A stretch of 64,000 nucleotides of DNA, from contig NC_086384.1 in assembly GCF_036588685.1 (NCBI RefSeq), forward strand, positions 42,036,001 to 42,100,000. The letters are read 5' to 3'. Position numbers and translations under genes: made by a program. Numbering within the stretch: the stretch's first letter is position 1; each line of letters begins with the position of its first letter. Below the pieces are notes generated by a model. The model was not told where the DNA came from, made no database searches, and saw only the letters and a list, made by a program, of their open reading frames with translations. The stretch comes from Mytilus trossulus (taxonomy: Eukaryota). Of the stretch, positions 41,806-61,268 are shown in pieces.

Positions 41806-41974
41806 NNNNNNNNNNNNNNNNNNNNNNNNNNNNNNNNNNNNNNNNNNNNNNNNNNNNNNNNNNNNNNNNNNNNNNNNNNNNNNNNNNNNNNNNNNNNNNN
41901 NNNNNNNNNNNNNNNNNNNNNNNNNNNNNNNNNNNNNNNNNNNNNNNNNNNNNNNNNNNNNNNNNNNNNNNNNN
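41806..41974. other. assembly gap (N run)
   Basis: Run of N. Confidence 1.
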
Positions 41975-41994: not shown

Positions 41995-43083
41995 TTAACA
42001 CGATTTACATATATGCAAACGCTTCAAAATTTTAAAAACTCTACTTCTAAATTGTCCGTTAAGCCAACTGAATAAACAAAAATTGATTGGTATACTTAGA
42101 CCAAAAAAAAGTCTACTGATGGTACTAAGGATTTCTAAGAATATGTGTATAGATTCAGTCAATGGTAAATCTGTGTATACCATAATGGTTAATGAAATGT
42201 CAGGTATAACGAATATGACATAAAGTAATGTTGCAATTAATGTTACCTTTGAAAGTCTTATGTCTGATTTTTCTCTTTCTGTGCTCTCTACGTTCAGACT
42301 TTTTCGGGTCTTAATCTGCTGTTTTAATAGTCGATGAATGCATACAAACAAAATAGTCATAGATATTCCAGGTATCATGTGTTGTACTATATCATTAATA
42401 ATCGTAATGATAAATTTTGAAAATCTATATGTTTTAAATACGTTGTTATCAGTAAAAACAAAAGACTTGCGGCATACTTCATGCACTTCATATGTTGCCT
42501 TATCGAGTACTGTTGCTTTTTCAAATTTAACATTGACTAAATAGAATATAGTAGATATAGAACATCCTAAAAATACTGACAATGTTATAAACAATACACT
42601 TGCCTTTGTATTAACAATAATTTTAAATCTCAAAGGCTTGTAAAGCATAATAAAAACCGTTAATGTTTGACCAACTTTAAGCCATTGTGCAATCGTGTGC
42701 AAACACATTGGAAGAAAGGTAAATGCCGCTTCATAAACGTAACATAATTCATATTTAAGGTAATTGTCTGTTGTCGAGATAACCGTTATCAGGGCTATAT
42801 TCTGCACTACTAACGCTGCTAGGTCGAGACTAGTATATGCTGCCATTAGTCCAAAGTTTTTCTTGTGATTTCCTATCCAGACAAGGTTCAACATTAGTAT
42901 CATCCAAATCACCAGGAAAAATATGAAAACAGGTTGCCAGTAAAGATAATATGCTATGGTACTGTCCCCGAATGTCTTTTTTGGAGAGTAAAAAGCGTCT
43001 TCCTGCATCTGTAGAACAGTTTTTACATCAGGAACACTTTGAAACACAGACATTAACCATGCTGTAACGTTTAACGGTAGCAT
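41995..43083 (-). CDS. Orphan class A GPCR, copy 2 (paralog of 19760-20836)
   Basis: 362-aa intact ORF colinear with copy 1 (AFYSPK, TIAYYLY, AYTSLD, KYELCYVYEA, QWLKVGQ, YKPL.FK.IVNTKASVL, FIITIINDIVQ, LSIPINF.LFSWL.GQFR); tttcAG acceptor 13 nt upstream of the ATG. Confidence 0.88.
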   Translation of the reverse strand: MLPLNVTAWLMSVFQSVPDVKTVLQMQEDAFYSPKKTFGDSTIAYYLYWQPVFIFFLVIWMILMLNLVWIGNHKKNFGLMAAYTSLDLAALVVQNIALITVISTTDNYLKYELCYVYEAAFTFLPMCLHTIAQWLKVGQTLTVFIMLYKPLRFKIIVNTKASVLFITLSVFLGCSISTIFYLVNVKFEKATVLDKATYEVHEVCRKSFVFTDNNVFKTYRFSKFIITIINDIVQHMIPGISMTILFVCIHRLLKQQIKTRKSLNVESTEREKSDIRLSKVTLIATLLYVIFVIPDISLTIMVYTDLPLTESIHIFLEILSTISRLFFGLSIPINFCLFSWLNGQFRSRVFKILKRLHICKSC

Positions 43084-43569
43084 ATTTATGAAATACCTGA
43101 AACAATAAGAACATGTGCGTTAATTAAAAAAACACGTTCAAATAAAATTGAGAAAGGAAATGGGGAATATGACAAAGCGACAACAACCCGAACATAGAGC
43201 AGACAACAGCCAAAGGCCAAAAGCAGGTTAATCAGTACGGTATCACCAGGATCTCTCAAAACCTACACGTGAAAGGTAAAAATGAATAATCACATAGAAA
43301 CGTTAGGATCTATATGACCACAAAACGCAACGTGAATCATTTTGATTTACAGACTACCAACACGGAAATGTTAATGTAAAGCCTAACATAGCTTGACGAG
43401 TTGGGTTCAACGAGTTTAGTTCCATTTGATATTTAGCCAAACTTTTTCATACTTGTAAAATGAGAACTGCCACATAAGCAAACTAAAAGTTTTATATCAA
43501 AATTGAAATCAATGTATCGATGGTAATTTTTTTAACTATGGCAAAACATGGGAGAAACTTAAAAAAAAA

Positions 43570-44306
43570 AACCTAGAGGCTCTAAAGGACCTGTGTTGCT
43601 CACCTTGGTTATGTGCATATTAAGCAATGGACACAGATGGATTCATGACAAGATTGTGTTTTGGTGATGGTGATGTGTTTGTAGATCTTACTTTACTGAA
43701 CATTCTTGCTGCTTACAATTATATCTATCTATACTGAACTTGGCCCAGTAGTAACAGTGGAAAATATTTTTCAAAAGTTAACAAAAAATTTATAAAATTT
43801 ATGAAAAACTGTTAAAAATGGACTATAAAGGGCAATAACTCCTTAATACATCAATTGATCAAATTTATCATGTGACTGAATTGTTGATCTAACTTTGCTC
43901 TGCATGGCTGTTTACAGTTTATCTTTATCTATAATAACCAGGAGCTGCAATTTTTTTTATACTACCAATTCAGGTGCAGCAACCCAACAATGGGTTGCCT
44001 GATTGGTCTGAAAATTTCAGGACAAATACATTTGACCTGATGAACAATTTTATCTATGTCGGATTTGCTCTTAATGTTTTGGTTTCAGAGATATGATAAA
44101 AAAAAAACTGCATTTACCCTATGTACTATTTTAGCCATGTTTGCCATCTTGGTTCGCGGGCAGGGTCATCAGACACATATTTTGAACTACATACTCCATT
44201 GATGGTTGTGTTCAAGTTTCATTAAATTTGTCTCAGTAGTTTCAGAGGAGAAAATTTTTTGTAAAAGTTAATGACGACGGACCTTTGTGCCAGGTGAGCA
44301 AAAAAA
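43570..44306. mobile_element. HINE/Helentron-like non-autonomous element
   Basis: Starts aacctagaggc...gctcacct and ends gacgacggacctttgtgccaggtgagcaaaaa (subterminal inverted gctcacct/aggtgagc, microsatellite remnant, terminal hairpin). Confidence 0.6.
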
Positions 44307-44389
44307 GAAGACACAACACAAATCAGTTCATTAAACAACATGGATATCATCTTGTAAAAATCAGCCGAACGTTCGAATCACCTTCTATT

Positions 44390-44715
44390 CACTAGTAACC
44401 CGAATTTAACTTGATCGGACAAAAACGTGTTAACGCTATTTAAATGAGATTGATCGTTATTTGATAAAGATTGACAAAAATTAAAAATTATATTTAATTC
44501 ATTTCAATTCATATCAATTCATTTTAACGCCAGTCAAATAGATTTCTCTGCAGTCGATCAATTGAAATCAAGTTAGTGGTTAGTTGCGTCAAACTAATAG
44601 GCCACGCCCCTGTTAAGCTATTTCAAACATGCATTAATTCGTTTTAAACATGGATGAGACCCGGGCTTTTTACAGGTAAATCACTCAAGCAAAACGACCT
44701 CGATGTATCTATCGT
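44390..44715 (+). repeat. Left TIR (326 bp)
   Basis: cactagtaacccgaatttaac...gatgtatctatcgt; reverse complement of 59394-59719. Confidence 0.95.
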
Positions 44716-47700
44716 AAGTAACGTGTGGTCCTTTGCAACTATTTACGAAACTTTATGTATTCCTGTTTATTTACCGTTTCTCTTTTTTTCTGTTTACTAT
44801 ATTGTACTCGTATATCAAATGTAGACACGGAAAACTACACAGAAATTATTTATTGTGTACATAATTTAAATCGATGTGTCTTATATTTCCGGGAAGCAAC
44901 ATGATATATTCATTCTCTTGCTGTATATTGATATTTGGAAAAGATTGTAATGAAAAACAAGATATTGTTGAATAATAAAATTGACGAAGATAATTTTGAC
45001 GTTGAATATGATAAACAGAAAGGCATGCTCAAATTTCTAAATGAAGTAGCAGCCCACTGAACTTTTAAAACTGTGTTAAATTGTAATACCGGTCACTGGC
45101 CAAATCGGGCGTTAATTGTGGAAGAGAAACAATTAAATATCAAACAAAAATATTGTTCTTACGATTCTGTAAAAAGATTATTGTGCTGTCATGCACCCTG
45201 GCGTACTTGTAATAAATGAACATGTATTCTGTATATATGAGATAAATTTTAGTCTGCGATAAAGATGGGTAAGTTGATTTAAGTTTAACGACCTTGCATA
45301 TTGACAGGCTATTTGTCGGCATACTCTTACGTTTTTTAATGTTTTAAAGAAAACATACATTTACGTATTGGGCATTTAATATAAGTCTACTTACTAAATT
45401 GAAATGAACATAAACATTGTTAAAAAAAACAAAAAATTGAAAAGAAACAGTCTGCATTGTTGCTTTCATATAATTTCATTTCCTATATATTTGAGCGGAA
45501 ATTTCTAAGTTAAAACTGATTGTAGTATAGATAAAATATTTCATCTAGGTGCTCTCGTTGAAGTTCTCTCGTTACATATTAAAATGAATTCCATTGGTCG
45601 GAACGTTTGCAAACTTTCAATCCAGGTGTTCTCAACGAGGTCCGCGTTCATGTTTCAAATCAAAACACAATAAGAAGTCCAGTTCGGCAATAAGAAATAA
45701 AATTAAGACTCTACGAAATCCGATTAAACAAACAGAATTTAGAAAAATAACATTTTTACGATTCTTCCAATCACGACAAAAATATCTATCTTTTTCTCCG
45801 ATGAAAATCATTACTTTTTATATTAGAACAAGTCAAAAGTTGCCGGAGCTTGATTATGATGCATGCGAAACTTAAATAAATAATTATCCGGTTTGTATTT
45901 TTCAAAATAACTATTACATCCGATAAAAATCGAAAAATAAATTATCGGTAAAAAATACCGATTTTTCTATGAGACAAAAATTATCCTTATTGGAGTCAAA
46001 TTTGTAATAAAGGACAAACCATATCCTCGTGTTTTTTTTTATGCAGCACTAGTAAGCATAGTTCGTCTGTTCGCTTCAAACCAAGCCATCATAAATACAC
46101 CAGAGATTACTAAAATGAAAGTCTTAATTTCATTGAGATTTTTTTGTAGGTATTAAGCTTCAATTCGACCATTGAATTTTTCAGAATTACGAAAAATATG
46201 TTATAATCCTTGATCTTCCCGAAGCTTATACTTCGTTCAGTAGATTGTATGGATATTTTTTTTAAAGAAACACTGGTCTGTTACTGCAAAAAAAAACGAT
46301 TTTTGTTTGAAGTAACGAATGTCATTCTTACAAAAAAAGAAAGTTTTCGTGTTTTAGGTCGTCCTGATTCAAACGTAAAAGTTGAAATAAAAATTACACT
46401 CCTAGATTACACTAAAGTCATTTCGCTAGCACACATGGGACTATATTTATTAATCGTTCATTTGCAAGTCAAAAATAATAATTATGCAAAACAAATGATA
46501 AAACTTCCCAATTTAAAATTGAGAAAAATCCGACAGGAAACCAAAGTACAAAGGTACAGCATTTATTTAAAAACAATCTCCATCCAACTTCAAAATGTGA
46601 GGTAAATCGATTAGCTTACGCTAGCCAAGCAACCAACAGACAAAATAAATCTTGCCTCCTCGATGAAGACTATCTATAGACACGGAATAAAAAAATAAGG
46701 AAATAATAGCATGTTAGATTGGTTACAAACACATTTATGCAAACATGAAGCAGCGGTTTCTTTACTGAACTGGTCAGTGGTAATATAAAACCAGGGTTTC
46801 AAAAAGATGAAGAAAAAGAAAAAGACATTTAAACATGTTAAAATTTATTTAAAAGCAAATCAGAAATTGTGTTTAACTGAAATTGAAAAAAAAAAGGATC
46901 ATAATAGTCTCCATGCGTGATCCATGCATGTCTCTGAATTACTTGTCTTTTGTGCATTTACTTTCCTACAAAATGACTATAGTATAAGTGTTAATTTTCA
47001 TTTGTAAATGTCTGGTTACGCAATGTCCACCAATATACAGACATTGTGCGAAAAAATATAGTTTAGAAGATATGGTTCTATGCTGAATACAGAAAACATA
47101 TAGTCGTTTCTTCATGAAGAATTGAACTCTAACATTACAGAATACCAAACTGGCTCTCCTTTTTTAGTATTTCCATCTGGTGTCTTACATTTAAGGATAT
47201 AACTTGTATTAAGTCGTGTCGACTAACTGTCAAGACAGACGCCTTTATAGAAAATAAAGGAATATGGAGTAAAAGTACAAGGGACCTTTAATATCGAACA
47301 CAAAGTCAGAGCTTAACAAAAATACAAATTATCAATGGTCAGCGTTTTATTCCTGTTCATCTTTATAGTCGCTAGAGGGTCTTCAACAATGAAAGAATCA
47401 CTTGTTTACGGGAAGAACAAAACGACAATAGCAAGAAAGGATCTGATAATGAATAATTTGATTTTCTGTCTCAGGACCTGCGCATATATAAAATACTTGC
47501 CACTGAACATTGAACCAAGTAAAATCAATACACATCGTTTCATATATAAAAATCAATCTACAGATGATAAAGCATTTCTTTGTTGGTAGACTCCCTTTTT
47601 TGGGAGTTGAACACTGTGCGTGACAAATTTCTTCTCATGGGAAGATATATTTTTCCCATGGGAATATTAGTTTTTTCTTTTATTTTTTCAGAATTTGTAA

Positions 47701-48420
47701 AAGTGCTATGAAATATCGACATGGACTGACGATCACTAGTAACCAATGACTGGAACAATTTAACACGCATTTCAATAAATTAAAAGTATTTCTATCATAC
47801 TTTTACACTCAATAGTCATTTTTTTTTATCGTTGAATGATTGATAGAAATTCTACCGTTCAGCGGCTGATTTTACAATTTGAATCTTTCACCTTGGTTTT
47901 CGGTCAATATCATCGTGAATTTCATGTAATAGTGTTCGCTGAACTGCCAAGTATCAGAAACATGTCTTTTGAATTTCAGAATTTAATTTAAGAATCAAAA
48001 ATTATAATTCTGTTTTAATCTATATACATGGGGAATGACGAATCGTATTTTAGATTGTTTTCTAATTATAACCTTATAATTTCGTGAATTTACATCATAA
48101 TCATTATGAATGTACTTATTCTTTTTCGTCTACGTAACTCGATATGCGTGTTTTCGCCACTAGAAAGATGTGCACTTACATTTTTTTTGTTCAAATTTCT
48201 TATCATGCTTATGCAATGTTGTAACTCGTCTACACGAATATCTTTTATTTCAGTTCATTTTTGGCAAACACCTCGGAAGTCTTTTCTAGATCTCGGGTAA
48301 TTATCAAAGAAAATCCAGAGTTTTGCATTTACAAGGACGCGTACGGATGATATTTGTGATATATTCACTTGTACTTTACCCGTAGGCTGTCTTCGTGTAC
48401 TGTAATTTATGGTTTAACGG

Positions 48421-48810
48421 AATACAAATACTTTATTTCTCATAAAACTTCAATTGCTAGTTATCAAGAACATACATAAACATAACTATAAGGTAAAATT
48501 ATTACATGCATGTGTAAACGATACAATTAAATTAACTTGGAGAACTGACTTTCACATTTATAACTTTTACATAGTCTTTCTAATATTACAATATTTGATA
48601 AGTTTAACTGTTGAACAGCTTTAGAGATATAAGGGTTTGACTAACAGTAGTTTCTTAAACATTTCCTTCTTTTTCTATAGTTTAAATATTTTACAATTCA
48701 TAATGTAATGGTACTCGTCATCAATGTTGTTTGTGTCACAGAGACGGCATATTCTGTCTTCTCTGTGTAAATCCTGACACCTTCTAGACTCAATCGGCAA
48801 CTACCACATC
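48421..48810 (-). mobile_element. 3' relic of a non-LTR retrotransposon (LINE)
   Basis: LPIESRRCQDLHREDRICRLCDTNNIDDEYHYIMNC, a C-terminal CCHC-type motif typical of LINE ORF2; aataaagtatttgtatt tail. Confidence 0.75.
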
Positions 48811-50009
48811 TATATCTCGGCGTTTTGCATTTGCGCCGTAATATATGAATTTAGAAAGGTAAAAAGGAAAAGTAGTTTTCAAATTGATAATTCTTTTTGA
48901 AAATACGACATTATGTTTTATGCGATTCTGCAATAAAAGCAAAGAATTCTTCTTGAAACTGGTCTTTGGGTTTTTGTTTAATACATTTTGACACCCATTT
49001 ATCACAAACTGTGCACACTGAGGACGGATAACTAATATACGTCCTTGCTGTGCATTATAATTCAAAATAGTTGTAATTTGCAATTGTTTTAAATTTGTAT
49101 TTTTTCCTCACTAGATAGGTGAAAGTATGTATAAAATTTAATGTAAATTGCGAAAATGCATTACGAGCATTGATCTATACTTTTAAGTTAGAATTTAGAG
49201 TCTCAACTTTTTTCAAAATCTCTGTAATATTACCCATGTATAATTTATGTTTATGTCAAATGCGTTTGATTGGATAATAATTAAAGGTAGGCGTGGTTTT
49301 GGTAACTTTCCTCCAATCAACTGGCCTATTCGACAAACCTGTGTGCGCTGATGCGTGTAAACTGGGTATTGTAACGGTACGTGTCTTACATCAGAATCTA
49401 TCGTGCGTAACCAATGTTTATTGTATTATTTCTTGTCATGTGGTCAATTTATCTGAAAAAGTTCCAAAGGTTACAACTTTTTGAAAGTTTTTTTTGGCAG
49501 AAACCAACAGCACTATTTGACGAAGACGAAGACGAAATAAAGGATTAAATTTTAACGTCCAGTGACATATAATTACAATGATGTCGAAACAGAACTTGAA
49601 ATTGACAATATGTTTTCATAGAACCGTCGCTTTTCCAAAGATTTCACGCTTAGTTGCTATTTCACAACTTCAAGTTCGCATTATAGTTATACTGTAATAC
49701 ATGTACAAATAACTAATAATAAACAAATTCTGATGATTTCTGCCACTGTTCTAGGACTTTTTAGATGTAATATAAATCTGTGATTTTTCTATATTCGTAC
49801 TTTCGACGAAGCAAAGCAAGTTCGATCTAGATCTGGACATTTATGCATTAAACATTTACAATATTCAATAGTTGTACAAAAATTTTGTAGAACATGTAGA
49901 AAAATCTGCCTTTTCGGATAAAATCTTAATTTACGTACCATTATAATATTCAGAATGGAAATGGGGAATGTGTCAAAGAGACAACAACCCGACCAAAGAA
50001 AAAAAAACC

Positions 50010-50977
50010 GGCGTTTTGCATTTGCGCCGATCTGCATTTCATTTGCGCCGATTTTTTCTTTCATTTGCGCCGATTTTATTTTTCATTTGCGCCGATTTTT
50101 TTACAGGTAAATAACAGGTAAACTACAGGTGAAATGATATAGATGTGGTATGAGTGCCAATGAGACAAATCTCCATCCAAGTAATGTTAGTTTCATTTAT
50201 CATTAAAGACCTATTCCGTTAGCCAGTTGTACATATGTTATGAATTGTCATGCAATCATAACATGTATATAACTGTTGTCTCCTGCTTAAACTCAAGAAG
50301 TAAAAACCTAAGATAAAAGCACTTTGTTTATAATGACGAATTAAAAATATATGTACAATATTCAAATCCATAAAAACGGAATACATTCAAATTATAAATC
50401 TGTTCTTTCCGAGTATGTATAGGCAACACATCTTTCTTATGATTCCGTCTCTTCTATTTTTGGCGTAATTGTCGATAATGAAGGCCACCTTTTCTTTGTC
50501 TGACATACATGTACGTACTGGTGGGGCATTTCTAGAGAAAGCATTTTCTCACAAGGAAACTATTCAACCAAGAGTTCCAAATGGTGAAGTTAAATACATC
50601 CCTTCGTTAATTTTATGGACGCTATCTCGAATTGGTTGACCGTTATGCCGAATGTGTAATTGTACGTTGTCTAAGAATGTATGACATTTGTCATCAGAAG
50701 GAGCGGAGCGTCAGGCAATGTCAAACGTGAAGCAATCATCGATTTCATTTAGGGAAAGGAATAGTAACCCGAAACATTGGGATAGCCATTTACCAATTGC
50801 AATGTCACTTGATTTGTCTTTATACTCTCTGCTCAGCCAATGTAAAAGTATGAACTTACCTGTAACTTACCTGTAAATCCAATTAGGAAAAAATATAAAA
50901 TCGGCGCAAATGAAAAAATGAAATCGGCGCAAATGAAAGAATGAAAAATTTTAAAATCGGCGCAAATGTCATACGCC
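50010..50977. mobile_element. MULE-like MITE with internally repetitive TIRs, nested in a dispersed repeat
   Basis: GGCGTTTTGCATTTGCGCC ... GGCGCAAATGTCATACGCC; 4 left and 3 right copies of catttgcgccgat; 9-bp TSD aaaaaaacc / caaaaaacc; host repeat (aatggaaatggggaatgtgtcaaagagac...aggtcttcaatgta) resumes on both sides. Confidence 0.75.
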
Positions 50978-53900
50978 CAAAAAACCAACACTGAGCAGAA
51001 GGTCACCAACAGGTCTTCAATGTACCGTGACATTTCCGCACCCGGAGGCGTCCTTCCACTGGCCCCTAAAGAAATATATACTATATATATAGTCCAGTGA
51101 TAATAAACGCCATACTTATTTCCAAATTGTACACAAGAAACCAAAATTAAAATAATACAAGACTATATTGTTAATTCAAGTTTGACATCTAACATCTTAA
51201 TCCGTAATCCACATTTACCTGACGACCTTAAATTGTTTATTGTTTTTTCTCAATCGAATATCCTCACACAGGAGACTGAGACAAATAGGTTATTTGTAAA
51301 GGTTTTTATCAAAACTAAAATGAATGAAAATATCTTTGTAGAATATGAATTTGCCTATTAAGCGAATAATTATAATACATAGATTTCAACATATTCAAAA
51401 GAGAGATTACTGATAAGATGTCCAAAATATATGTACATGTATATTGCGATTAGTGCTATATTGTATGTCAATGATATTGAATGCCGCTGAGTGTAAAATA
51501 TTTGTCAGCTTAAAAAAATATGTTTGACACTGCTGGTTTTAATTTTCTGACTCAAGTATAAATTTTAAAAAAGTTTATAGTTTCTGAATATTTTTAGATT
51601 CAATATTTTATCATTATTATTATTTCAAAGTCTCACCGCATACAAACATAAAATGAGTCCCAGAACTAAACAATTATTTAAAAAGATAAATGAGAGCCGT
51701 ATAAGACACAATATATGAATTTAAACAAATTTTTAATCATTTACATTCAAAATTTACAGTGTCCGTATACTAAATGAAATGAAACATCTTTTTCTTTTAA
51801 GAACAAGTGAAATAAAATGTCGTTTCTTTTCAATAAAATATTGTTGATGTTTTTGGCACCTGTTGCAGCAACATTGTCGTTATTGAATAAATATATAAAT
51901 TGTTCGCTATTTGATATTTATAAATCAAAATGTTAAGCTTAATGTATCACGATATGTCTATAATGGGTATTTTAAAAGCCTTGAATATAAAAAAAGAAGA
52001 TGTGGCATGATTTCCAATTAGACAATAGTCCACAAGAGACCAAAATGACAGAGACATTAACAAATATAGGTCCCCGTACGGCCTTCAACAATGAGCAATG
52101 CCAAATCCGCATGGTCAGCTATAATAGGCCCCGACTTGACAATATAAAACAATTCAAACAAGAAAACTAACCGCCTTATTTATATAACAACAAAAAAATA
52201 TACGAAAAATAAATATGTAACACATAAACAAACGACAACTACTGAATTGCAGGCTCATGACTTGGGACAGGCACATACACAAATAATGTGGCGGGGTTAA
52301 AATTGTTAGCGGGCTCCCTATCCTCCCCCTAGTCTCGGTCAGTGGTATAAAAGTACATGTACAACATAAAAAAAACGAACTATAAGAATCAGTTTGAATA
52401 GGCTTAACTCATCAGATAGACAAAATCATGGAGGGGTAGAGTGTCATATTTGTAACTGGTCGTTATGCAACCATGAATCATTTAATCTATTCTTTATATT
52501 TCATCTCTTTATTCTGTAATTTAAAGTGTTTATCCCATTATCATCTTTATTTGTGTAAACTCCATTTATTTACTTTCATAGCCGCATATATGTACATGTA
52601 CATGGTATTTGTTACAGGAACAATTTTGACATAAAAAAAATTTACAACAAAGTTAGTGTCCATATTTTCAGGACGCGATAAATGAATTGAATTTAGCTAG
52701 AAGGTTTTTTTCTAAGAAAATCCAGTTTTTAACACACTTATGCTTAATACTAGTACTCACACTATCAGCCCACTTGTGAACTTTTGCATTTAACCGATTT
52801 GAGCTCATGTTATTTAATCTACACCACAAACGAATCATACCCAACTATATCAGTCCTATTCAGGACCGATAACTCTGTCGATAGATATTATAGGGTATAC
52901 AATATTGTTAAAACCAGATCAATCGTATCATACGTCTCTGCTGGAATGTATACAATAACTATTTTTTTGGCACAATTTAAACTTCATATCGATTCATTGC
53001 CTAGATTTAGCTTTAAATATTGAATTAAAAAATAAATAACAATAAAATCATATTCAATGATCGAAATTCATTTGGATTAAAATTTGAATCAGAATATTTC
53101 TTTGAAATAATTATAGAAACATATAAATATTTGAATGCCTTTTAAGCAAAAAAAAAATTTTTAAAGAAATTTTCATAATTTCATAATATTAATATTCTCC
53201 TAAAGTTTACTATGAACCATACTTCTGATTTGACACGGGAAGGAGAATATATTTATTTGTACATTTATGAAAACTTTTGTATATCACACAATTTAAACTC
53301 TGGCAATACATGTATACACACTGACAGGATAATGAATGTCACCTGGTTGCTTTTGGTTTGCACGTCTTCCTGACAATATATTATGATATAACATTTAACC
53401 AAAGTTAGATTTCACCTGTTCGGCCAAGGAATGTAAAGGTGTAGAATATTTATCTATTATAATTGGACCTCTTTTTTTATTCTCTTAGGATGAATATTTT
53501 TTTTGTTCTAAAAGAAATGTTTTATATATTTCTAAAGAAAAATTAAACATACAAAACTTAAAAAAACATTTTTAAAAAAAGAAGAGATTTTTTTTATTAT
53601 AGATATTGTTAACTATTTTCTGGTAAAAGTATCGCCTTGAAGAATATCTGTCAAAATAAATTATCCTGTGTCACACTTTAATATAAAAAAATAAATTATT
53701 AAGAAATTTTGAAATCAATGATATCGAAATGTCACTAAAGGAAAATAACAGAAACATCAGAGATTCTTTATGAAAAATTAGATATAATCTAGGAAAGTGT
53801 TACTATAGAAATCATTGATTTGATGCAACATTTCCATATGATACATGTACATCAGCCGCCATTTTGAAAAATCTCGGAAAATTTCCTTTTTTAAATCGAG

Positions 53901-55836
53901 GTTTGACCGAATTTGTCTTGAAATTAAACTGTTTTAAGTAGTATTTTTCGCCAGCTATATGTTTGAATATACTTGATCGATTTGCAAAGTTTGTGTTTTA
54001 TTTACAGAATTTCTATATTTGTTGTAAAAGTAGACATGGGTATCGGTAATTTAGCATTCAACGGAGAAATGACGAGGAAAAGTGCATGTTTTACGATGTC
54101 GATTTTTGGGAAAAATTTTGGTTGCTTATATAGGGAATCACTGAAGCGTGACTGGAACGGGCCCCCTCTTAGGTCAGTCAGTGGGCCCCCACTTATGAAA
54201 ATTCCTGGATCCGCCACTGAAAACACATTTACATGTTGATTGGAATAGTACGAATTTTTATTGGTTTATAATACAATACAGATTAAGATCGATTACCAGG
54301 TGAAACTTCTGATCTGTGTTTTTAAAGAATGGGTACAAATTATATGTTTAATGTCGATTATGTTAGTATACATCTATATTTATAGGTACTTAGTTTCTCT
54401 CCATTCCAAAATACAGTACTCACAATACCATTTTATTTAGAATTTATGTTTTTCTCTCTTCAAAACTGTCTTTTTGTGAATTTATTCAGCCACACATCAA
54501 ATCATTTGTTTTTGATACCATACACGTTTGTTTTTTAAATGGAATGTCCTATTTCTTTCCCTCTTATGTTCAAGGGAAATCGACGATTTGTCCCCCCCTT
54601 TTTTTCACCGGTCTAGGAAAAACATGATGAATTGACATTTTCTTATAAAAAAAATCATTAATAAAATGCTAAATTATTTTCATAAGATATATTTTGTAAC
54701 TGAATCTGGGACTTAATCATTGAATGCCCGAGCATACAGTTATATTTGTTTATTTTTCTTGTTTCAATTGCCATGTACATGTATGAGGCTAAAAAAAAGG
54801 TCACCATTTGTAAGGATATGAAGGTGTTTTACAGATATAAGAACAATGTACAAAAAAGTAAGTCTAGAGAGCAAGACCAAATAAATATAGAGGTCATGAA
54901 GAAAATATTGATTGATAATATGTTGTTTAACGTCCAGTGGCAAATATTTGATGCATGTTGAGGACAAATATAATAAAGATCAATTGGCAGGAAAAGAAAG
55001 TATAAAGTGAAATAGTAAAAACAAAGATCTAAAAATATAGAGATATAGAAACGATGATCTGAACCCCCACCCCCACCCCTTTAGAAAAAAAAGCAACAAC
55101 CAAAAAACAAAACACTCACACTCGCATATACCGTAAATACATATGTAAAACAATCTAAAATTTTGGTTTCATGGCGCCCCCAGACATCAAGGTTCTGGAT
55201 CCGCCCCTGGCTTAGTGCAGTTTCTTGAGCGTATTGCACCAATGCGGCCTAGGTGGTGTTTAGACGCTCCCCAATATACCGTCGTATATTACAAAAATTG
55301 TGAATGGAAATGGGGAATGTGTAAACGAGACAAAAACCCGACTATCTAGCAGACAAAAGAGGAAGGCATATATTACGGGTCTTCAATGTAGCGAGAAACT
55401 CGTGCGTATACATACATGCATTATTGTATGCACATGCTTGGACTTATAGATGCATATATATACTTGTACAAGTCCAATATTGTGTTATAAAGTATTTCGT
55501 ATAAAAATACAGGAACATTTTAATGCTAATCCAAACGCACAGGTGTCAATATCTGCAAATCTTCCGGTAAATACAAGTTGTCATTTAAAAAAATTGTGAA
55601 ATTATAGTGTATTTTAACCCAAACAAAATTATGGATGAATAGATAAATTTATTTTAAAGAATTCCAATCCCTTAAAAACGAGGCACCATCATATATACTT
55701 GTAAAACAGCTCAAATTCTAATCACTGAAGAGACATGTATTTTCGAAATGTCCATCTGGTGCAAGAAAATTGGTACCGTTAATTTTATTCTATATTAACC
55801 AGTGGCACGTGTCATAATTTTTAAGAAAAGGGATAG

Positions 55837-56622
55837 AACAAGAGGCTGTCACAACGACAGCAAACCGGATTTATTAGCATTTATTTGTGTCCTGGCAATA
55901 TCACAAGAACCATTACTGATGATTGAAAATTGTCAATATCAAATTTAACCTCTATTTTGTCATCAGTATCAACATATTAAAATTTGAAAAGCTTAGATTG
56001 AATGGTTTGTGAGTAAATGCAACAATGTGAATGGAAACACCATTTTACGATCTTTCAAGAACCATAACTCCTGAACGGTAAAAGTCAAAATCGTCATTAT
56101 TGAACTTGACCTCTATTTTGTCATCAGTAACTACACATTAAAATTTAAAAGCTTTGGTTGAACGGTTCATGCGTAAATGCACGGACACGACTGGAAACGC
56201 CATTTTTCAATCTTTCAAGAACCATAACTCCTGAACGGTAAAAGTCTAAATCGTCATTATTGAACTTGACCTCCATTTTGTCACCAGTAACAACATATTA
56301 AAATTTGGGAAGCTTTGGTAGAACAGTTCATGCGTAAATGCACGGACAAGACTGGAAACGCCATTTTTCAATCTTTCAAGAACCATAACTCCTGAACGGT
56401 AAAAGTCAAAATGGCCATTATTGAACTTGACCTTCATTTAATTGTCAGTAACAACATATTAAAATTTAAAAAGCTTTGGTTGAACGGTTCTTGAGTTAAT
56501 GCACGGACAACATTTGATTGCCGACCGCCCGACCGCCCGACCGACCGCCAGCCCTGCCGCCCGCCCGCCGAGCATCCCCAATTTAATAACCGACATTTTT
56601 GTCACAAAAATCCGATTAAAAA
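55837..56622. mobile_element. HINE/pearl-like element with an internal 160-bp tandem array
   Basis: aacaagag start; about 3.5-4 units of 160 bp (tgaacttgacct at 56101, 56261, 56421); (ccga/ccgc)n microsatellite; terminal palindrome and aaaaa end. Confidence 0.8.
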
Positions 56623-59393
56623 GTATGAAACAAAAATAACCGGTTTTTCAAAAACTATATTTTCAAAATGCACTGCATAATTTACACCGCTTTAAGGTGT
56701 TTCATTTTATAAATATTTTATGTTTAATTTTGTGCGTATACGAAAAAATGATAGCAAGTTAAACTTCCATGTTTATGACTTACATGTATTATATTTCTTG
56801 TAAAATTGATAGATGAGCGGTTTTCACAAATACCGAACATAAGAATATAGCGTAAACGTCAATTAATGGACAAGCAACCCAACGAGAAAAATATAATTTC
56901 AGAGGCATCTTCATGTACATGTATAACTAGTTTTGAGTTAGAGAAATCATTCAACATGTTCAATGCCATGCATACGATTCATTTCAGATTTGTGCGTTTT
57001 TTCGATATACGAATAAGTCAATAAGATACAAAAAAGTAATTGAAGCAAAAAAAAAGATACATGAAATAACGAATTAACATAAGTTTACAAATACATACCT
57101 AGGTGCATTTACTAAAACAACATTTATTTTTTTCATATTATTGTAATTTTATGTTTATGTACGTATACCCGATATGGAGTTCTTCTGAAATTAAAAATCA
57201 CTTGAATGGGTATTTCTGGTGTATATACATGTATAACACGTGACATCTACATGTACAATATACGGAAATGACACGGCTGGGTATTGTAAAGTTACTGAAG
57301 GTAGATTACTGGTAGGTGTATATCTCCGGGCGAAAAAAAATACAGATTTGTGAAAACGGTTAGATGTAATTTGTCATATTGTAAACGTTTATAAATAAAT
57401 TTGGTGTATTTACTGTCTTCTGTTATTAGTTTTATTTTCAATGTTGTCAATTTTGATGGCGACACGCCTACTCTGACGTTGTGTATTCATACGCCAAAAT
57501 GTGTGTACGTTGTTATTGTTAATATAAATAATATTAAAAGTTCTTTTTGCCTTATTTTTTATAGAAATTTATTTATAATGAATGGCAATAATTTATTTTG
57601 ATTTTATTAAACCATAAAACTAATTTTTGACTCTTCACATTGAATAATCCGCGATTAAGAAAAGAGCTCATCTCTTCTGTTTTATCATATTAATTGCGCC
57701 AATAAATGGAACTTGACACATTCCCCATTTCCATTCCCAATTTTATTAATTGTGTCATATTTACCTCGAAACTATTGCCCAAAGTATTAACATATTAACA
57801 CGTACATGTAACATTAGAATACTTACTTCAACTGTTAAATAACTTTATAATTACTAAAATTCGAAATTGTGTACTTCTCCTTCCGTATGCCATGTTTTTT
57901 GTGTCAATTCTATCATTAGGTCCATTGTGCACTTTTTTGGCAGTCTAAGTGCACTAAGGATGCCCTTTCAGTTTGCGAATTCTAAACCTACATGTAAATA
58001 CCGAAAAGGACCTCCTCAGTGAAGAAGAAGAAACATTTGAAAACAAGTCTATAATATTTGCACAATTGAATGATTGTTTTATTGGCGCAAATGAATGTTG
58101 CAGTTTTTATGATAAAGTGATACAAAAAAAAAAGAATTCGCGTAATTAACTTGTGGCGCAAATTAATTCTTTTTTAGCCAAACTGGATATCGGCCTTCAA
58201 AACATTGTGTATACACAAAGAAAGCAATATTTATCTTTTACGCAGTTTAGCCGGAGAATAAAAGTTTTTGCAATTTGTGTAGGATTTTAACTTTAAAATG
58301 CAATGAACAAATAAGAAGATCGTTAGAAACCTTAAGTGAATCGGAAAATGAGCTATGCACGATGAAAGGGAAAAGTTTGGTGCGTCGATAAAAATTTCAT
58401 GGATGCACTTGATAATTGTAAAATTTCAAGTCTTTAAATAACATCCATTTGTAGAACAAGATTATTTCGATCCTTCAAATATATGTAGAAAAATAATAAA
58501 AATATATATTATTGAGTCTCTTTCATATAAATACTGTAGATTTGTATTTGATCATCGATTGCAAACATAACGTTCAGTGAGAAATATTTCATGTATTCGT
58601 ACAGAGAACAAATCAACTTCTTTCAGAATACAATTGATTGGTTATTGAAGTAAATGATTTGCGACAGAATAAGTGAAACTTGGCCAGCAGCTTACCTCTA
58701 AAATAAAGAAATATAAAAAAAGGTAGAGTTAATTCTGTATTTTACTCATACTGCACCTTTTACAGTAAATACCGAAAATATGAAATACATCGATTTAAAT
58801 TATGTACACAATAAATAATTTCTGTGTAGTTTTCCGTGTCTACATTTACATACGAGTACAATATAGTAAACTGTATAATTTTTGTATGTATTTGATCCTA
58901 TCAAGGAGGTTATATTATAACATCCTTGATCCTATGAGCTGTATATTTTCTTACGGAATAAAGAATTATTATAGTAAAACAGAAAAAAGAGAAACGGTAA
59001 ATATACAGGAATACATAAAGTTTTGTAAATAGTTGCAAAGGACCACACGTAACTTACATGCCACGAGTTTTTATAGAACTTGGCAATTTTTGAAACGCAT
59101 GTATATTATATGCGATAAAGATCTATTGCATTTGGGCAAATTCAAATCATGTTATATATCTAACTATTTTATTTTCAACAGATTCACAAGTTTTGCATTT
59201 TTAAACCGCGTGTGCATATATATTTTAATGTTTTTATTTTAATTCCTTATATATGAACATTTCACGTGTATCATTCGGGCGCCCTATTATTCATTCGCTT
59301 GTTTAAATTGTGAAACATGTGACTTTACTAAGATTGTAAGCATTTAAAGTTTGAAACAAAAAACTGCAATTGGCGCAAATTGATTCTGCCCAA

Positions 59394-59719
59394 ACGATAG
59401 ATACATCGAGGTCGTTTTGCTTGAGTGATTTACCTGTAAAAAGCCCGGGTCTCATCCATGTTTAAAACGAATTAATGCATGTTTGAAAAAGCTTAACAGG
59501 GGCGTGGCCTATTAGTTTGACGCAACTAACCACTAACTTGATTTCAATTGATCGACTGCAGAGAAATCTATTTGACTGGCGTTAAAATGAATTGATATGA
59601 ATTGAAATGAATTAAATATAATTTTTAATTTTTGTCAATCTTTATCAAATAACGATCAATCTCATTTAAATAGCGTTAACACGTTTTTGTCCGATCAAGT
59701 TAAATTCGGGTTACTAGTG
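59394..59719 (-). repeat. Right TIR (326 bp)
   Basis: acgatagatacatc...gttaaattcgggttactagtg. Confidence 0.95.
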
Positions 59720-60342
59720 ATTGTTGAGCAAATATTTGGCTTCTTAATGATGAAAACTAATGTTAGTCGAACTGCTGTATACCCAACAAAATGTTTCCAA
59801 TAAAGGGGCTTTATTTATTTGTCAAAGGGTCAAATAAAACATTGTGTTAAATTTTAAGAACATTGTGAACGAACCAAAATAATTTTTAGTCAGGGTGCTT
59901 AATACATGTACATGTAATACGTTTTTCTGGTAAATTGAGAAAGTAGAAAGTATAACGAATAACTATCCAACTCCCTTGCAGTCCATCTTAAGTACATTTT
60001 GACAAATTCTGTTGAAGACTCCTTTGGCATATACGCCCAGTTCCTCAACTATTCATCTTTGATTTTAACTTCCTAATTACTGTCAATTAAACAAAAAAAC
60101 GCATTAAATGCACACATTTATTACAAACTATTATTTTCATGAACCCGAATATAATGTTAACAACTGAATCTTTCGATGTCATGAAACATAGCTTTGTTTA
60201 TCTCAATATTATTTTTTTATAACCAGGTTCAAACCATATTTTTCTTAAATGTCCTTACCAAGTCAGAAAAATGACAGTTGGTATCCTATAGTTTGTTTCA
60301 GTGTGTGTTGCATTGTCGTCTTTCGATTTTTGAGCCACTTAA

Positions 60343-60933: not shown

Positions 60934-61268
60934 TATCAAAGGTACGAGGATTATAATTTATTACGTCAGACGCACGTTTCGTCTACATAAGACTCATCAG
61001 TGACGCTCATATCAAAATATTTATAAAGCCAAACAAGGACAAAGTTGTAGAGCATTAAGGATCCAAAATTCAAAAAAGTTGTGCCAAATACGGCTAAGGT
61101 AATCTATGCCTGGGATAAGAACATCCATCGTTTTTTCGAAAAATTCATAGTTTTTTTAACAGGAAATTTTTAAAAATTACCACATTCTTGATATTCATGT
61201 CAACACTTAATCGCTTAAGTGTTGAATTCTGGGCTGGTAATACCATCGGGGATTCCACCAGCGGCATA
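60934..61268 (-). mobile_element. Retrozyme-like monomer, family B
   Basis: Near full-length copy of the 350-nt unit at 26761-27110, containing an intact hammerhead. Confidence 0.8.
60963..61006 (-). ncRNA. Type I hammerhead ribozyme (intact core)
   Basis: GCGUCA-CUGAUGA-GUCU(UAUGU)AGAC-GAAA-C(GUGC)GUC/UGACGU: all core nucleotides present, 6-bp stem I, 4-bp stem II; predicted cleavage after GUC (between 60969 and 60968). Confidence 0.9.

What the first reader, a model, noticed from the sequence alone, without database searches (positions are those of the whole stretch)
44390..59719. 15.3-kb CACTA-type element: young 326-bp TIRs around an old, decayed, cargo-filled interior
Seen: CACTA/TAGTG termini, an exact ATT TSD and 326-bp TIRs with a single mismatch. 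The 326-bp unit has no TIRs of its own, so this is one element rather than two MITEs. The 14.7-kb interior has no intact long ORF; it holds eroded coding-like stretches and nested elements (LINE relic, MULE-like MITE, HINE, hammerhead fragment). Known: CACTA/CMC elements have CACT(A/G) ends and 2-4-bp TSDs, usually with short TIRs. Inference: a giant non-autonomous carrier moved recently in trans (or with homogenised TIRs), shuttling about 15 kb of passengers. It sits 1.3 kb upstream of GPCR copy 2.
Basis: partly seen in the sequence, partly recalled or inferred. Interest (0 to 1): 0.85.

Follow-up and report, generated by a model that had tools for sequence, protein, structure and literature searches.

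The report
Gene-less 15-kb CACTA-type mussel transposon
This 15.3-kb block is one young copy of a family of about 150 large, gene-less cut-and-paste transposons in the mussel Mytilus trossulus: a real but fairly ordinary CACTA-type element whose interior is the family's own shared body, not old decayed cargo.

Summary
Window 44390-59719 has CACTAG...CTAGTG ends, 326-bp inverted arms with one mismatch, and an ATT duplication on both sides.

It is one mobile unit:
- The terminal 29-mer occurs 315 times in the genome (reversed control 0), mostly as inverted pairs 3.5-43 kb apart (median about 15 kb).
- 13 of 15 pairs checked have perfect, mutually different 3-bp duplications.
- A 95%-identical paralogous site 61 kb downstream lacks the whole element and has a single ATT.

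The "young TIRs, old interior" reading is wrong. The interior is collinear and 97-98.7% identical between copies. This copy's interior has only 0.62% private changes. Only one 0.97-kb MITE is private to it.

Passengers are real at the subfamily level. One example is a dispersed element bearing 161-bp tandem repeats.

No reading frame of 55 aa or more has a Pfam match, and I found no transposase remnant, so the element is non-autonomous. The genome holds many intact CMC (Transposase_21) genes, but I could not link any to these ends.

Both arms share all 10 subfamily-diagnostic changes, so they evolve in concert.

The scan has noted similar gene-less CACTA-ended elements elsewhere in this genome.

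Verdict: a new member of a known kind, of modest interest.

The parts
44387..44389 (.). Left copy of the 3-bp target-site duplication (ATT)
   Evidence: The paralogous empty site has a single ATT.
44390..59719 (.). The whole element: 15,330 bp, gene-less, a non-autonomous CACTA-type transposon copy
44390..44715 (+). Left terminal inverted repeat, 326 bp, starting CACTAGTAACCC. It holds a 10-bp x3.4 tandem (44492-44524) and two TTGATCG motifs.
   Evidence: It is 100% identical to the left arm of a copy on C13.
44716..44892 (+). Inner, imperfect continuation of the left inverted arm (92-95% to 58772-59057)
   Evidence: I2, I3.
48690..48800 (-). Weak relic of a LINE reverse-transcriptase C-terminus, shared with other copies
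   Evidence: tblastn with the RT ORF nested in copy C5: 46% identity over 37 aa, E 3e-5.
50006..50979 (.). About 0.97-kb MITE nested in this copy only. It has its own inverted ends, CATTTGCGCCGAT subterminal repeats and an 8-9-bp A-rich TSD.
   Evidence: It is absent at the same point in all other copies.
51985..52300 (.). Embedded piece of a very abundant dispersed repeat, part of the family body
   Evidence: A 30-mer at 52225 has 8,322 genomic hits at <=3 mismatches. The same piece occurs in unrelated loci.
52840..55210 (.). 2.4-kb segment present in the window's subfamily and missing or replaced in the more diverged subfamilies
   Evidence: C13_31.65M, C12_27.1M, C9, C1.
55843..56617 (.). 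Passenger: a dispersed element carrying a 161-bp x3.6 tandem array (55926-56510). It was inserted into the subfamily master with a 6-bp TSD (AAAAAG).
   Evidence: 1,860 candidate loci, mostly outside this family; empty state in two other subfamilies.
58772..59057 (-). Inner, imperfect continuation of the right inverted arm
59058..59393 (-). 336-bp segment of the ancestral long arm, kept on the right and deleted from the left arm in this subfamily
   Evidence: C12_27.1M, C9 and C1 carry it on both arms. Loose ends at 44714/44715 in reads.
59394..59719 (-). Right terminal inverted repeat, 326 bp, ending GGGTTACTAGTG
59720..59722 (.). Right copy of the target-site duplication (ATT)

Best explanation
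Window 44390-59719 is one recently inserted copy of a multi-copy family (about 150 elements) of large, gene-less, non-autonomous cut-and-paste DNA transposons in Mytilus trossulus. Its ends (5'-CACTAG...CTAGTG-3') and its 3-bp target duplications are those of the CMC (CACTA/EnSpm-Mirage-Chapaev) superfamily. Shown: the element moves as a single unit bounded by the 326-bp arms and duplicates 3 bp of target. Its roughly 14-kb interior is the family's own conserved body, which has picked up other repeats over time and carries them along when it moves. It encodes nothing recognisable. Its two arms evolve in concert. Inferred: a CMC DDE transposase supplied in trans by another element binds the conserved arms, cuts the element out and re-inserts it. 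The genome holds many intact CMC transposase genes, but none was linked to these ends.
For: Termini, TIRs and TSD. Terminal 29-mer: 152 forward and 163 reverse hits against 0 for the control, with 38 clean +/- pairs among the first 100 hits, 3.5-43 kb apart and median about 15 kb. 13 of 15 independent pairs have perfect, different 3-bp TSDs: ATT, AAG, CTA, TAA, ATG, TTT, CCT, AAA, TAT, TTG. Two 11.8-kb copies on C12 have different TSDs, so deletion derivatives also move. Paralogous empty site: the left flank (95% identity) ends at G000:C12:42157088 and the right flank starts at 42157086, leaving a single ATT and no element. Interiors are collinear at 96-98% in 5 copies, 92-95% in 2 and 86-91% in 2. 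This copy's private substitutions are 78 of 12,569 interior sites (0.62%) and 0 of 651 TIR sites. No Pfam match at E <= 0.001 in 66 open frames of >=55 aa; one frame touches DUF7325 at E 0.0092, taken as chance. No tblastn or blastx hit to 11 CMC transposase ORFs of the same genome. No PF02992 hit lies inside the element. The genome has 46 PF02992 matches, many with open frames of 600-1015 aa, including an 861-aa frame at 11 places. Hallmarks of the superfamily are given in PMC4079192. Contigs >=95% identical to the interior occur in DNA runs of three organisms.
Against: No autonomous element with these ends was found, so assignment to CMC rests on the termini and TSD length alone. CACTAG ends also occur in some piggyBac elements (Kenshin, PMC4298943), although those use TTAA targets. 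No array of subterminal repeats like that of plant CACTA elements was seen. Two of 15 pairs have imperfect TSDs. A transposase split into many exons shorter than 55 aa is unlikely but not formally excluded. The scan's other notes report intron-rich CACTA transposases in this genome.
Confidence: 0.78

Rival explanations
1. Two independent insertions of a short 326-bp (or about 1-kb) element in opposite orientation happen to bracket unrelated host DNA, like a composite transposon or a chance pair of MITEs.
For: The arms are far better conserved than the interior across subfamilies: 96-100% against 86-98%. Read depth over the arm is about 7 times that of the interior.
Against: All 30 arms examined continue into the same family interior. 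TSDs match across each pair, not around each arm. The paralogous empty site lacks the whole 15.3 kb. The depth excess is explained by two arms per element plus subfamilies whose interiors fall below the 95% read filter.
Confidence: 0.02
2. The element is autonomous: it encodes its own transposase as a gene of many short exons that ORF and Pfam scans miss.
For: Other notes of this scan describe 13-exon and intron-rich CACTA transposases in this genome (untested here). The body is kept at about 14 kb in many copies.
Against: The exon-by-exon six-frame search with PF02992 found nothing in C12:42080390-42095719. blastx and tblastn against 11 CMC ORFs of this genome found nothing, even at E<=5. No open frame of >=55 aa has a Pfam match at E <= 0.001. 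RNA depth is 0-3 on both strands, and no splice joint inside the element appears among the joints the tool listed (38 more were not shown). Copies differ by many indels.
Confidence: 0.04
3. It is a non-autonomous element of another superfamily that makes 3-bp duplications (PIF/Harbinger, Zator, Academ), or of an undescribed one, rather than CMC.
For: No transposase was linked to the ends. None of the PF02992 loci I held shares the terminal sequence. No PF02992 hit lies inside any known pair.
Against: CAC...GTG / CACTA ends with 3-bp TSDs are the stated hallmarks of CMC (PMC4079192). The TSDs are not TWA, since only 1 of 15 is TAA, which argues against PIF/Harbinger and Chapaev3. The genome is rich in intact CMC transposases.
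Confidence: 0.14
4. It is an assembly or inversion artefact that created a false inverted duplication.
For: Long near-identical inverted repeats are a classic source of misassembly.
Against: About 150 copies lie on all chromosomes with the same architecture. The junctions have matching TSDs. There is a paralogous empty site. Independent short-read assemblies of three organisms hold the family.
Confidence: 0.02

Closest known systems
Non-autonomous CACTA/EnSpm elements of plants (dSpm/I, Tpn1, Caspar-like giants)
   Same: CACTA ends and 3-bp TSDs. They are large (10-30 kb), lack a working transposase, are moved in trans, and carry foreign DNA inside.
   Different: The host is an animal. The perfect TIR is 326 bp (ancestrally about 0.8-0.9 kb) rather than 13-30 bp. 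No array of short subterminal repeats was seen. No captured host gene fragment was detected.
Animal CMC elements (Chapaev, Mirage, EnSpm-type families of Hydra, oysters, fish)
   Same: CAC...GTG termini and 3-bp TSDs (PMC4079192). CMC-EnSpm insertions are reported as active in bivalves (bioRxiv 10.64898/2026.02.10.705023).
   Different: Described animal families are mostly a few kb, and their non-autonomous forms are MITE-sized. Chapaev3 uses TWA targets, which this family does not.
Giant gene-less long-TIR transposon family noted by this scan in the same genome (s1-818518)
   Same: Many kb of apparently gene-less DNA moved repeatedly between long inverted ends in M. trossulus.
   Different: That family is 35 kb with 2-kb arms, 4-bp TSDs and about 25 copies. 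This one is about 15 kb with 0.33-kb arms, CACTAG ends, 3-bp TSDs and about 150 copies. I did not test that note.
Long-TIR / foldback-type elements (Galileo, Foldback)
   Same: Long arms that stay identical to each other while subfamilies diverge, which is concerted evolution of the arms.
   Different: Those elements make 7-9-bp TSDs, belong to the P or MULE lineages, and their arms make up most of the element.

Membership tests
CMC (CACTA/EnSpm-Mirage-Chapaev) superfamily | Termini 5'-CAC(TA/TG)...GTG-3' | tested here: met
   CACTAGTAACCC...GGGTTACTAGTG in the window and in all 30 arms examined.
CMC (CACTA/EnSpm-Mirage-Chapaev) superfamily | Target-site duplication of 2-4 bp (3 bp for CACTA and Chapaev) | tested here: met
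   13 of 15 pairs have perfect 3-bp TSDs of different sequence. A single ATT is present at the paralogous empty site.
CMC (CACTA/EnSpm-Mirage-Chapaev) superfamily | Mobilised by a CMC-type DDE transposase (Pfam Transposase_21) carried by an autonomous relative with the same ends | tested here: inconclusive
   The genome has 46 PF02992 matches, many of them intact. None lies inside a known pair. None of the 11 loci I held shows these ends. Further fetching was blocked.
CMC (CACTA/EnSpm-Mirage-Chapaev) superfamily | Arrays of short subterminal repeats (the plant CACTA hallmark) | tested here: not met
   Only a 10-bp x3.4 tandem and two TTGATCG motifs lie in the arm, with no subterminal array. 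This feature is not required for animal CMC members.
Non-autonomous DNA transposon | No transposase coding capacity, while copies show transposition hallmarks | tested here: met
   (no coding signal). (mobility).
piggyBac (some have CACTAG ends, e.g. Kenshin) | TTAA target duplication | tested here: not met
   The TSDs are 3 bp and none is TTAA. The Kenshin TIR is described in PMC4298943.
PIF/Harbinger | 3-bp TWA target | tested here: not met
   Only 1 of 15 TSDs is TAA. The others include AAG, ATG, CCT and TTG.

The most novel reading that the evidence does not exclude
Gene-less 14-kb carriers with long arms that evolve in concert may form a distinct, stable lifestyle in mussel genomes. On this reading, the conserved body is kept for a non-coding function that aids mobilisation or evades silencing. 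The family would also act as a vehicle that spreads other repeats, including tandem-repeat seeds of satellites. It might be driven by a transposase lineage not yet recognised, since no known CMC gene could be tied to its ends.
Probability: 0.12. Interest if true: 0.55.

Novelty: new member of a known kind. Interest (0 to 1): 0.3.

Why it matters
The finding shows that cut-and-paste machinery in a mussel routinely moves 12-20 kb of non-coding DNA. One copy was 43 kb with a matching TSD. Such elements grow by picking up other repeats, which then travel with them. This is one concrete route to the large structural and presence/absence variation known in Mytilus genomes. It also gives a clean case of concerted evolution of long inverted arms: all 10 subfamily-diagnostic changes are mirrored on both arms. 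For annotation, about 2 Mb of this genome can now be assigned to one family, and arm identity should not be used to date such elements.

Tried and rejected
1. Transposase inside the element. I tried ORF lists, a Pfam scan of 66 open frames, tblastn/blastx with 11 CMC ORFs of the same genome down to E 5, and PF02992 exon-by-exon over the genome. Nothing was found in any of 11 copies. The only long ORF was a LINE RT nested in copy C5.

2. Autonomous partner.
- I compared the arm and its first 60 bp with 11 CMC transposase loci and looked for family boundaries among those loci. The only shared piece is a ubiquitous dispersed repeat.
- I did not use N-padded pattern searches to read further genome letters.

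3. Empty allele in other individuals. Reads and contigs were laid on 42890-48889, but no bridging or clipped record at 44389/44390 was among the rows shown, so polymorphism remains untested.

4. Hammerhead inside the element. There is no Rfam match at E<=0.1. The only hit is outside, at 60963-61006.

5. The scan's index gave nothing by sequence for the arm.

6. Rejected readings: two MITEs, assembly artefact, piggyBac, PIF/Harbinger (see rivals and membership test).
Full report
**Observation**

The window carries inverted arms at 44389-44715 and 59394-59720 (327 nt, about 100% complementary).
- The two arms are 99.7% identical, which is one mismatch.
- The ends read CACTAGTAACCC...GGGTTACTAGTG, and ATT lies directly outside both ends.
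- The arm has no terminal inverted repeat of its own.
- Nothing inside is an ORF longer than 132 aa.

The inverted similarity does not stop at 326 bp. 44714-44801 pairs with 58970-59057 (92%), and 44817-44892 pairs with 58772-58847 (95%). Between these blocks the right side keeps a 336-bp segment (59058-59393) that the left side lacks. Other subfamilies (C12_27.1M, C9, C1) carry that segment on both arms. The ancestral arms were therefore about 0.75-0.95 kb, and the 326-bp 'TIR' is what remains perfect after a deletion in the left arm of this subfamily.

**Genome and species**

The window is G000:C12:42036001-42100000 of a 1.30-Gb, 541-contig assembly. An 861-aa frame from the same genome is 100% identical to NCBI 'LOC134712602 [Mytilus trossulus]', so the host is the bay mussel.

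**It is a family, and it moves as one unit**

- The 326-bp arm has at least 40 near-identical hits among 371 candidates.
- The terminal 29-mer has 152 forward and 163 reverse matches at <=3 mismatches, against 0 for the reversed control. That is about 150-160 elements.
- Among the first 100 termini listed there are 38 clean plus/minus pairs. They are 3.5 to 43.2 kb apart, with most at 14-15.5 kb.
- I fetched ten further copies. All have the same ends. 13 of the 15 independent pairs for which I held both flanks have perfect 3-bp duplications that differ from copy to copy: ATT, AAG (twice), CTA (twice), TAA, ATG, TTT, CCT, AAA, TAT, TTG. Two pairs have one mismatch. The per-pair chance of such a match in this AT-rich DNA is about 2% (my arithmetic).
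- Two 11.8-kb copies on C12 have different TSDs, so a deletion derivative has itself transposed. A 43-kb pair on C7 also has a matching AAG. The positions of the three interior 30-mer markers show it is an ordinary copy with about 29 kb inserted into it.
- All arms examined run straight on into the family interior. None is a solo unit.

**Paralogous empty site**

The 400 bp left of the element match G000:C12:42156692-42157088 at 95%, ending exactly at the ATT. The sequence from the right-hand ATT onward matches 42157086-42157171 at 95%. The two matches overlap by exactly the three bases 42157086-42157088.

A diverged duplicate of this region, 61 kb downstream, therefore reads left flank - ATT - right flank with no element. 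This shows that the whole 15,330 bp went in as one piece, that 3 bp were duplicated, and that the insertion is younger than the 5%-diverged duplication.

**The interior is not old cargo**

- The interior is collinear with five copies at 96-98%, with two at 92-95% and with two at 86-91%.
- In a six-copy alignment (13,220 ungapped columns), pairwise identity is 97.1-98.7%. This copy has 78 private substitutions in 12,569 interior columns (0.62%) and none in 651 arm columns. Summed over the six copies, arms carry 0.54% private changes and interiors 0.91%.
- The interior is therefore about as young as the arms.
- The near-identity of the two arms says nothing about age, because the arms of a cut-and-paste element are not copied from one another at insertion. 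Both arms of this copy simply equal the family consensus. The left arm is 100% identical to the left arm of a copy on C13.

**Passengers are nevertheless real**

- Private to this copy is a 0.97-kb MITE at 50006-50979. It has inverted ends, CATTTGCGCCGAT subterminal repeats and an 8-9-bp A-rich TSD. The empty state is seen in the other copies.
- Shared by the window's subfamily but absent from three others is a 775-bp element at 55843-56617 with a 161-bp x3.6 tandem array. It sits between copies of AAAAAG, and the empty state is seen in C12_27.1M and C13_31.65M. The same tandem-repeat unit occurs at 1,860 candidate loci, mostly outside this family. It is therefore an independent dispersed element that entered the subfamily master and was then carried along.
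- The segment 52840-55210 is likewise subfamily-specific.
- A 30-mer at 52225 has 8,322 genomic hits, which marks an embedded high-copy repeat.
- A 37-aa match (E 3e-5) to a LINE RT lies at about 48690-48800.
- No hammerhead is detectable inside the element.

**Subfamilies**

Two interior 30-mers that are exact in eight of the nine other full-length copies compared have only 48 and 47 genomic hits, against 315 termini. Some pairs carry them with 2-3 mismatches. The window's subfamily is therefore roughly 30-45 copies, and the rest have interiors too diverged to match.

This also explains why read depth over the arm is about 7 times that of the interior at the 95% filter.

Arms are conserved far better than bodies: 96-100% against 86-98%. 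All 10 substitutions that separate the C9/C1 subfamily arm from the others are present on both the left and right arms of both copies.

**Coding capacity**

- None of 66 stop-to-stop frames of >=55 aa has a Pfam match at E <= 0.001. One frame touches DUF7325 at E 0.0092, which I take as chance.
- No copy has an ORF of >=100 aa with a recognisable product, except a LINE RT nested in copy C5.
- tblastn and blastx with 11 CMC transposase ORFs from this genome give nothing.
- PF02992 searched exon by exon does not hit the element.
- In one RNA run, depth over the element is 0-3 on both strands, and no splice joint inside the element appears among the joints the tool listed (38 more were not shown).

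The element is non-autonomous.

**Who moves it**

CAC...GTG ends with 3-4-bp TSDs are the stated hallmarks of Chapaev within the CMC group (PMC4079192). CACTA ends with 3-bp TSDs are the hallmark of CACTA/EnSpm (established knowledge, Yuan and Wessler 2011).

The genome has 46 PF02992 matches, many with open frames of 600-1015 aa. They include an 861-aa frame at 11 places (Pfam confirmed). Active CMC transposases are therefore plausible drivers.

I could not tie any of them to these ends:
- None lies within a known pair.
- The 11 loci I held do not contain the terminal sequence.

The superfamily assignment therefore rests on ends and TSD only. The alternatives fit worse. piggyBac elements with CACTAG ends exist (Kenshin, PMC4298943) but need TTAA targets. 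PIF/Harbinger and Chapaev3 need TWA targets.

**Distribution**

Contigs >=95% identical to the interior occur in DNA runs labelled as three different organisms, so the family is shared within the mussel species group. Whether this particular insertion is polymorphic could not be read from the rows shown.

**Comparison and verdict**

This works like the large non-autonomous CACTA elements of plants and belongs, by its ends and TSD, with animal CMC elements. It differs in its very long arms and in being a 14-kb gene-less body kept across about 150 copies.

CMC-EnSpm activity in bivalves is already reported (bioRxiv 10.64898/2026.02.10.705023). The scan has noted similar gene-less CACTA-ended elements of 13-17 kb on other pieces of this genome (s1-827111, s1-826856, s1-827107). 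These are probably the same family, but I did not test that.

It is a new member of a known kind. The useful extras are the paralogous empty site, the documented pick-up and carriage of passengers, and the concerted evolution of the arms.

The N runs at 29-170 and 41806-41974 were left untouched.

Noticed in passing
window 43490-44289: The left flank is a very abundant dispersed repeat with 5,659 candidate loci. It is strongly expressed on one strand in the RNA run (depth about 110-123 against 3-9 on the other strand). Recurrent joints run from 43699-43707 to 43907, and there are many loose ends at 43907 and 43937. This suggests a processed or circular RNA-producing repeat, perhaps a retrozyme or SINE.
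   Followed up: no
G000:C12:42156692-42157881 (outside the window): A 92-95% identical duplicate of the insertion region lies 61 kb downstream. Besides lacking the element, it has about 0.4 kb extra between the points matching window 59805 and 59797, with a 9-base overlap of the matches. This suggests another small insertion with a 9-bp TSD.
   Followed up: partly
window 60963-61006 (-): Type I hammerhead ribozyme match of 31.1 bits (E 3e-4), just under Rfam's gathering score of 34. It lies 1.2 kb right of the element and not inside it.
   Followed up: no
   Followed up: partly
G000, e.g. C2:90048934, C3:54403648, C5:11700733 (17 places): A 30-mer related to window 48755-48784 occurs as one identical 3-mismatch variant at 17 places that lie outside the known TIR pairs. 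This points to a second, recently amplified repeat that shares this segment with the family.
   Followed up: no
L061 3921-6503 (G000:C12:27638921-27641503): An intact 861-aa CMC transposase frame (Transposase_21 plus DUF1258) is present at 11 places in the genome. Ten of these give an identical PF02992 domain score and the eleventh is near-identical, and the frame is 100% identical to M. trossulus LOC134712602. No TIRs were found within 3.9 kb on either side, so its element is longer than 10 kb.
   Followed up: partly
G000:C7:71058155-71101349: A 43.2-kb copy of the family with a matching AAG TSD. Marker positions show that about 29 kb of foreign DNA lies between the points matching window 52225 and 56855.
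   Followed up: partly
window 44554-44557 and 44577-44578 (arm positions 164-168 and 187-188): Five of the ten subfamily-diagnostic arm substitutions cluster around the GTCGATCAATTGA palindrome-like motif. This could be a transposase-binding site that differs between subfamilies.
   Followed up: no
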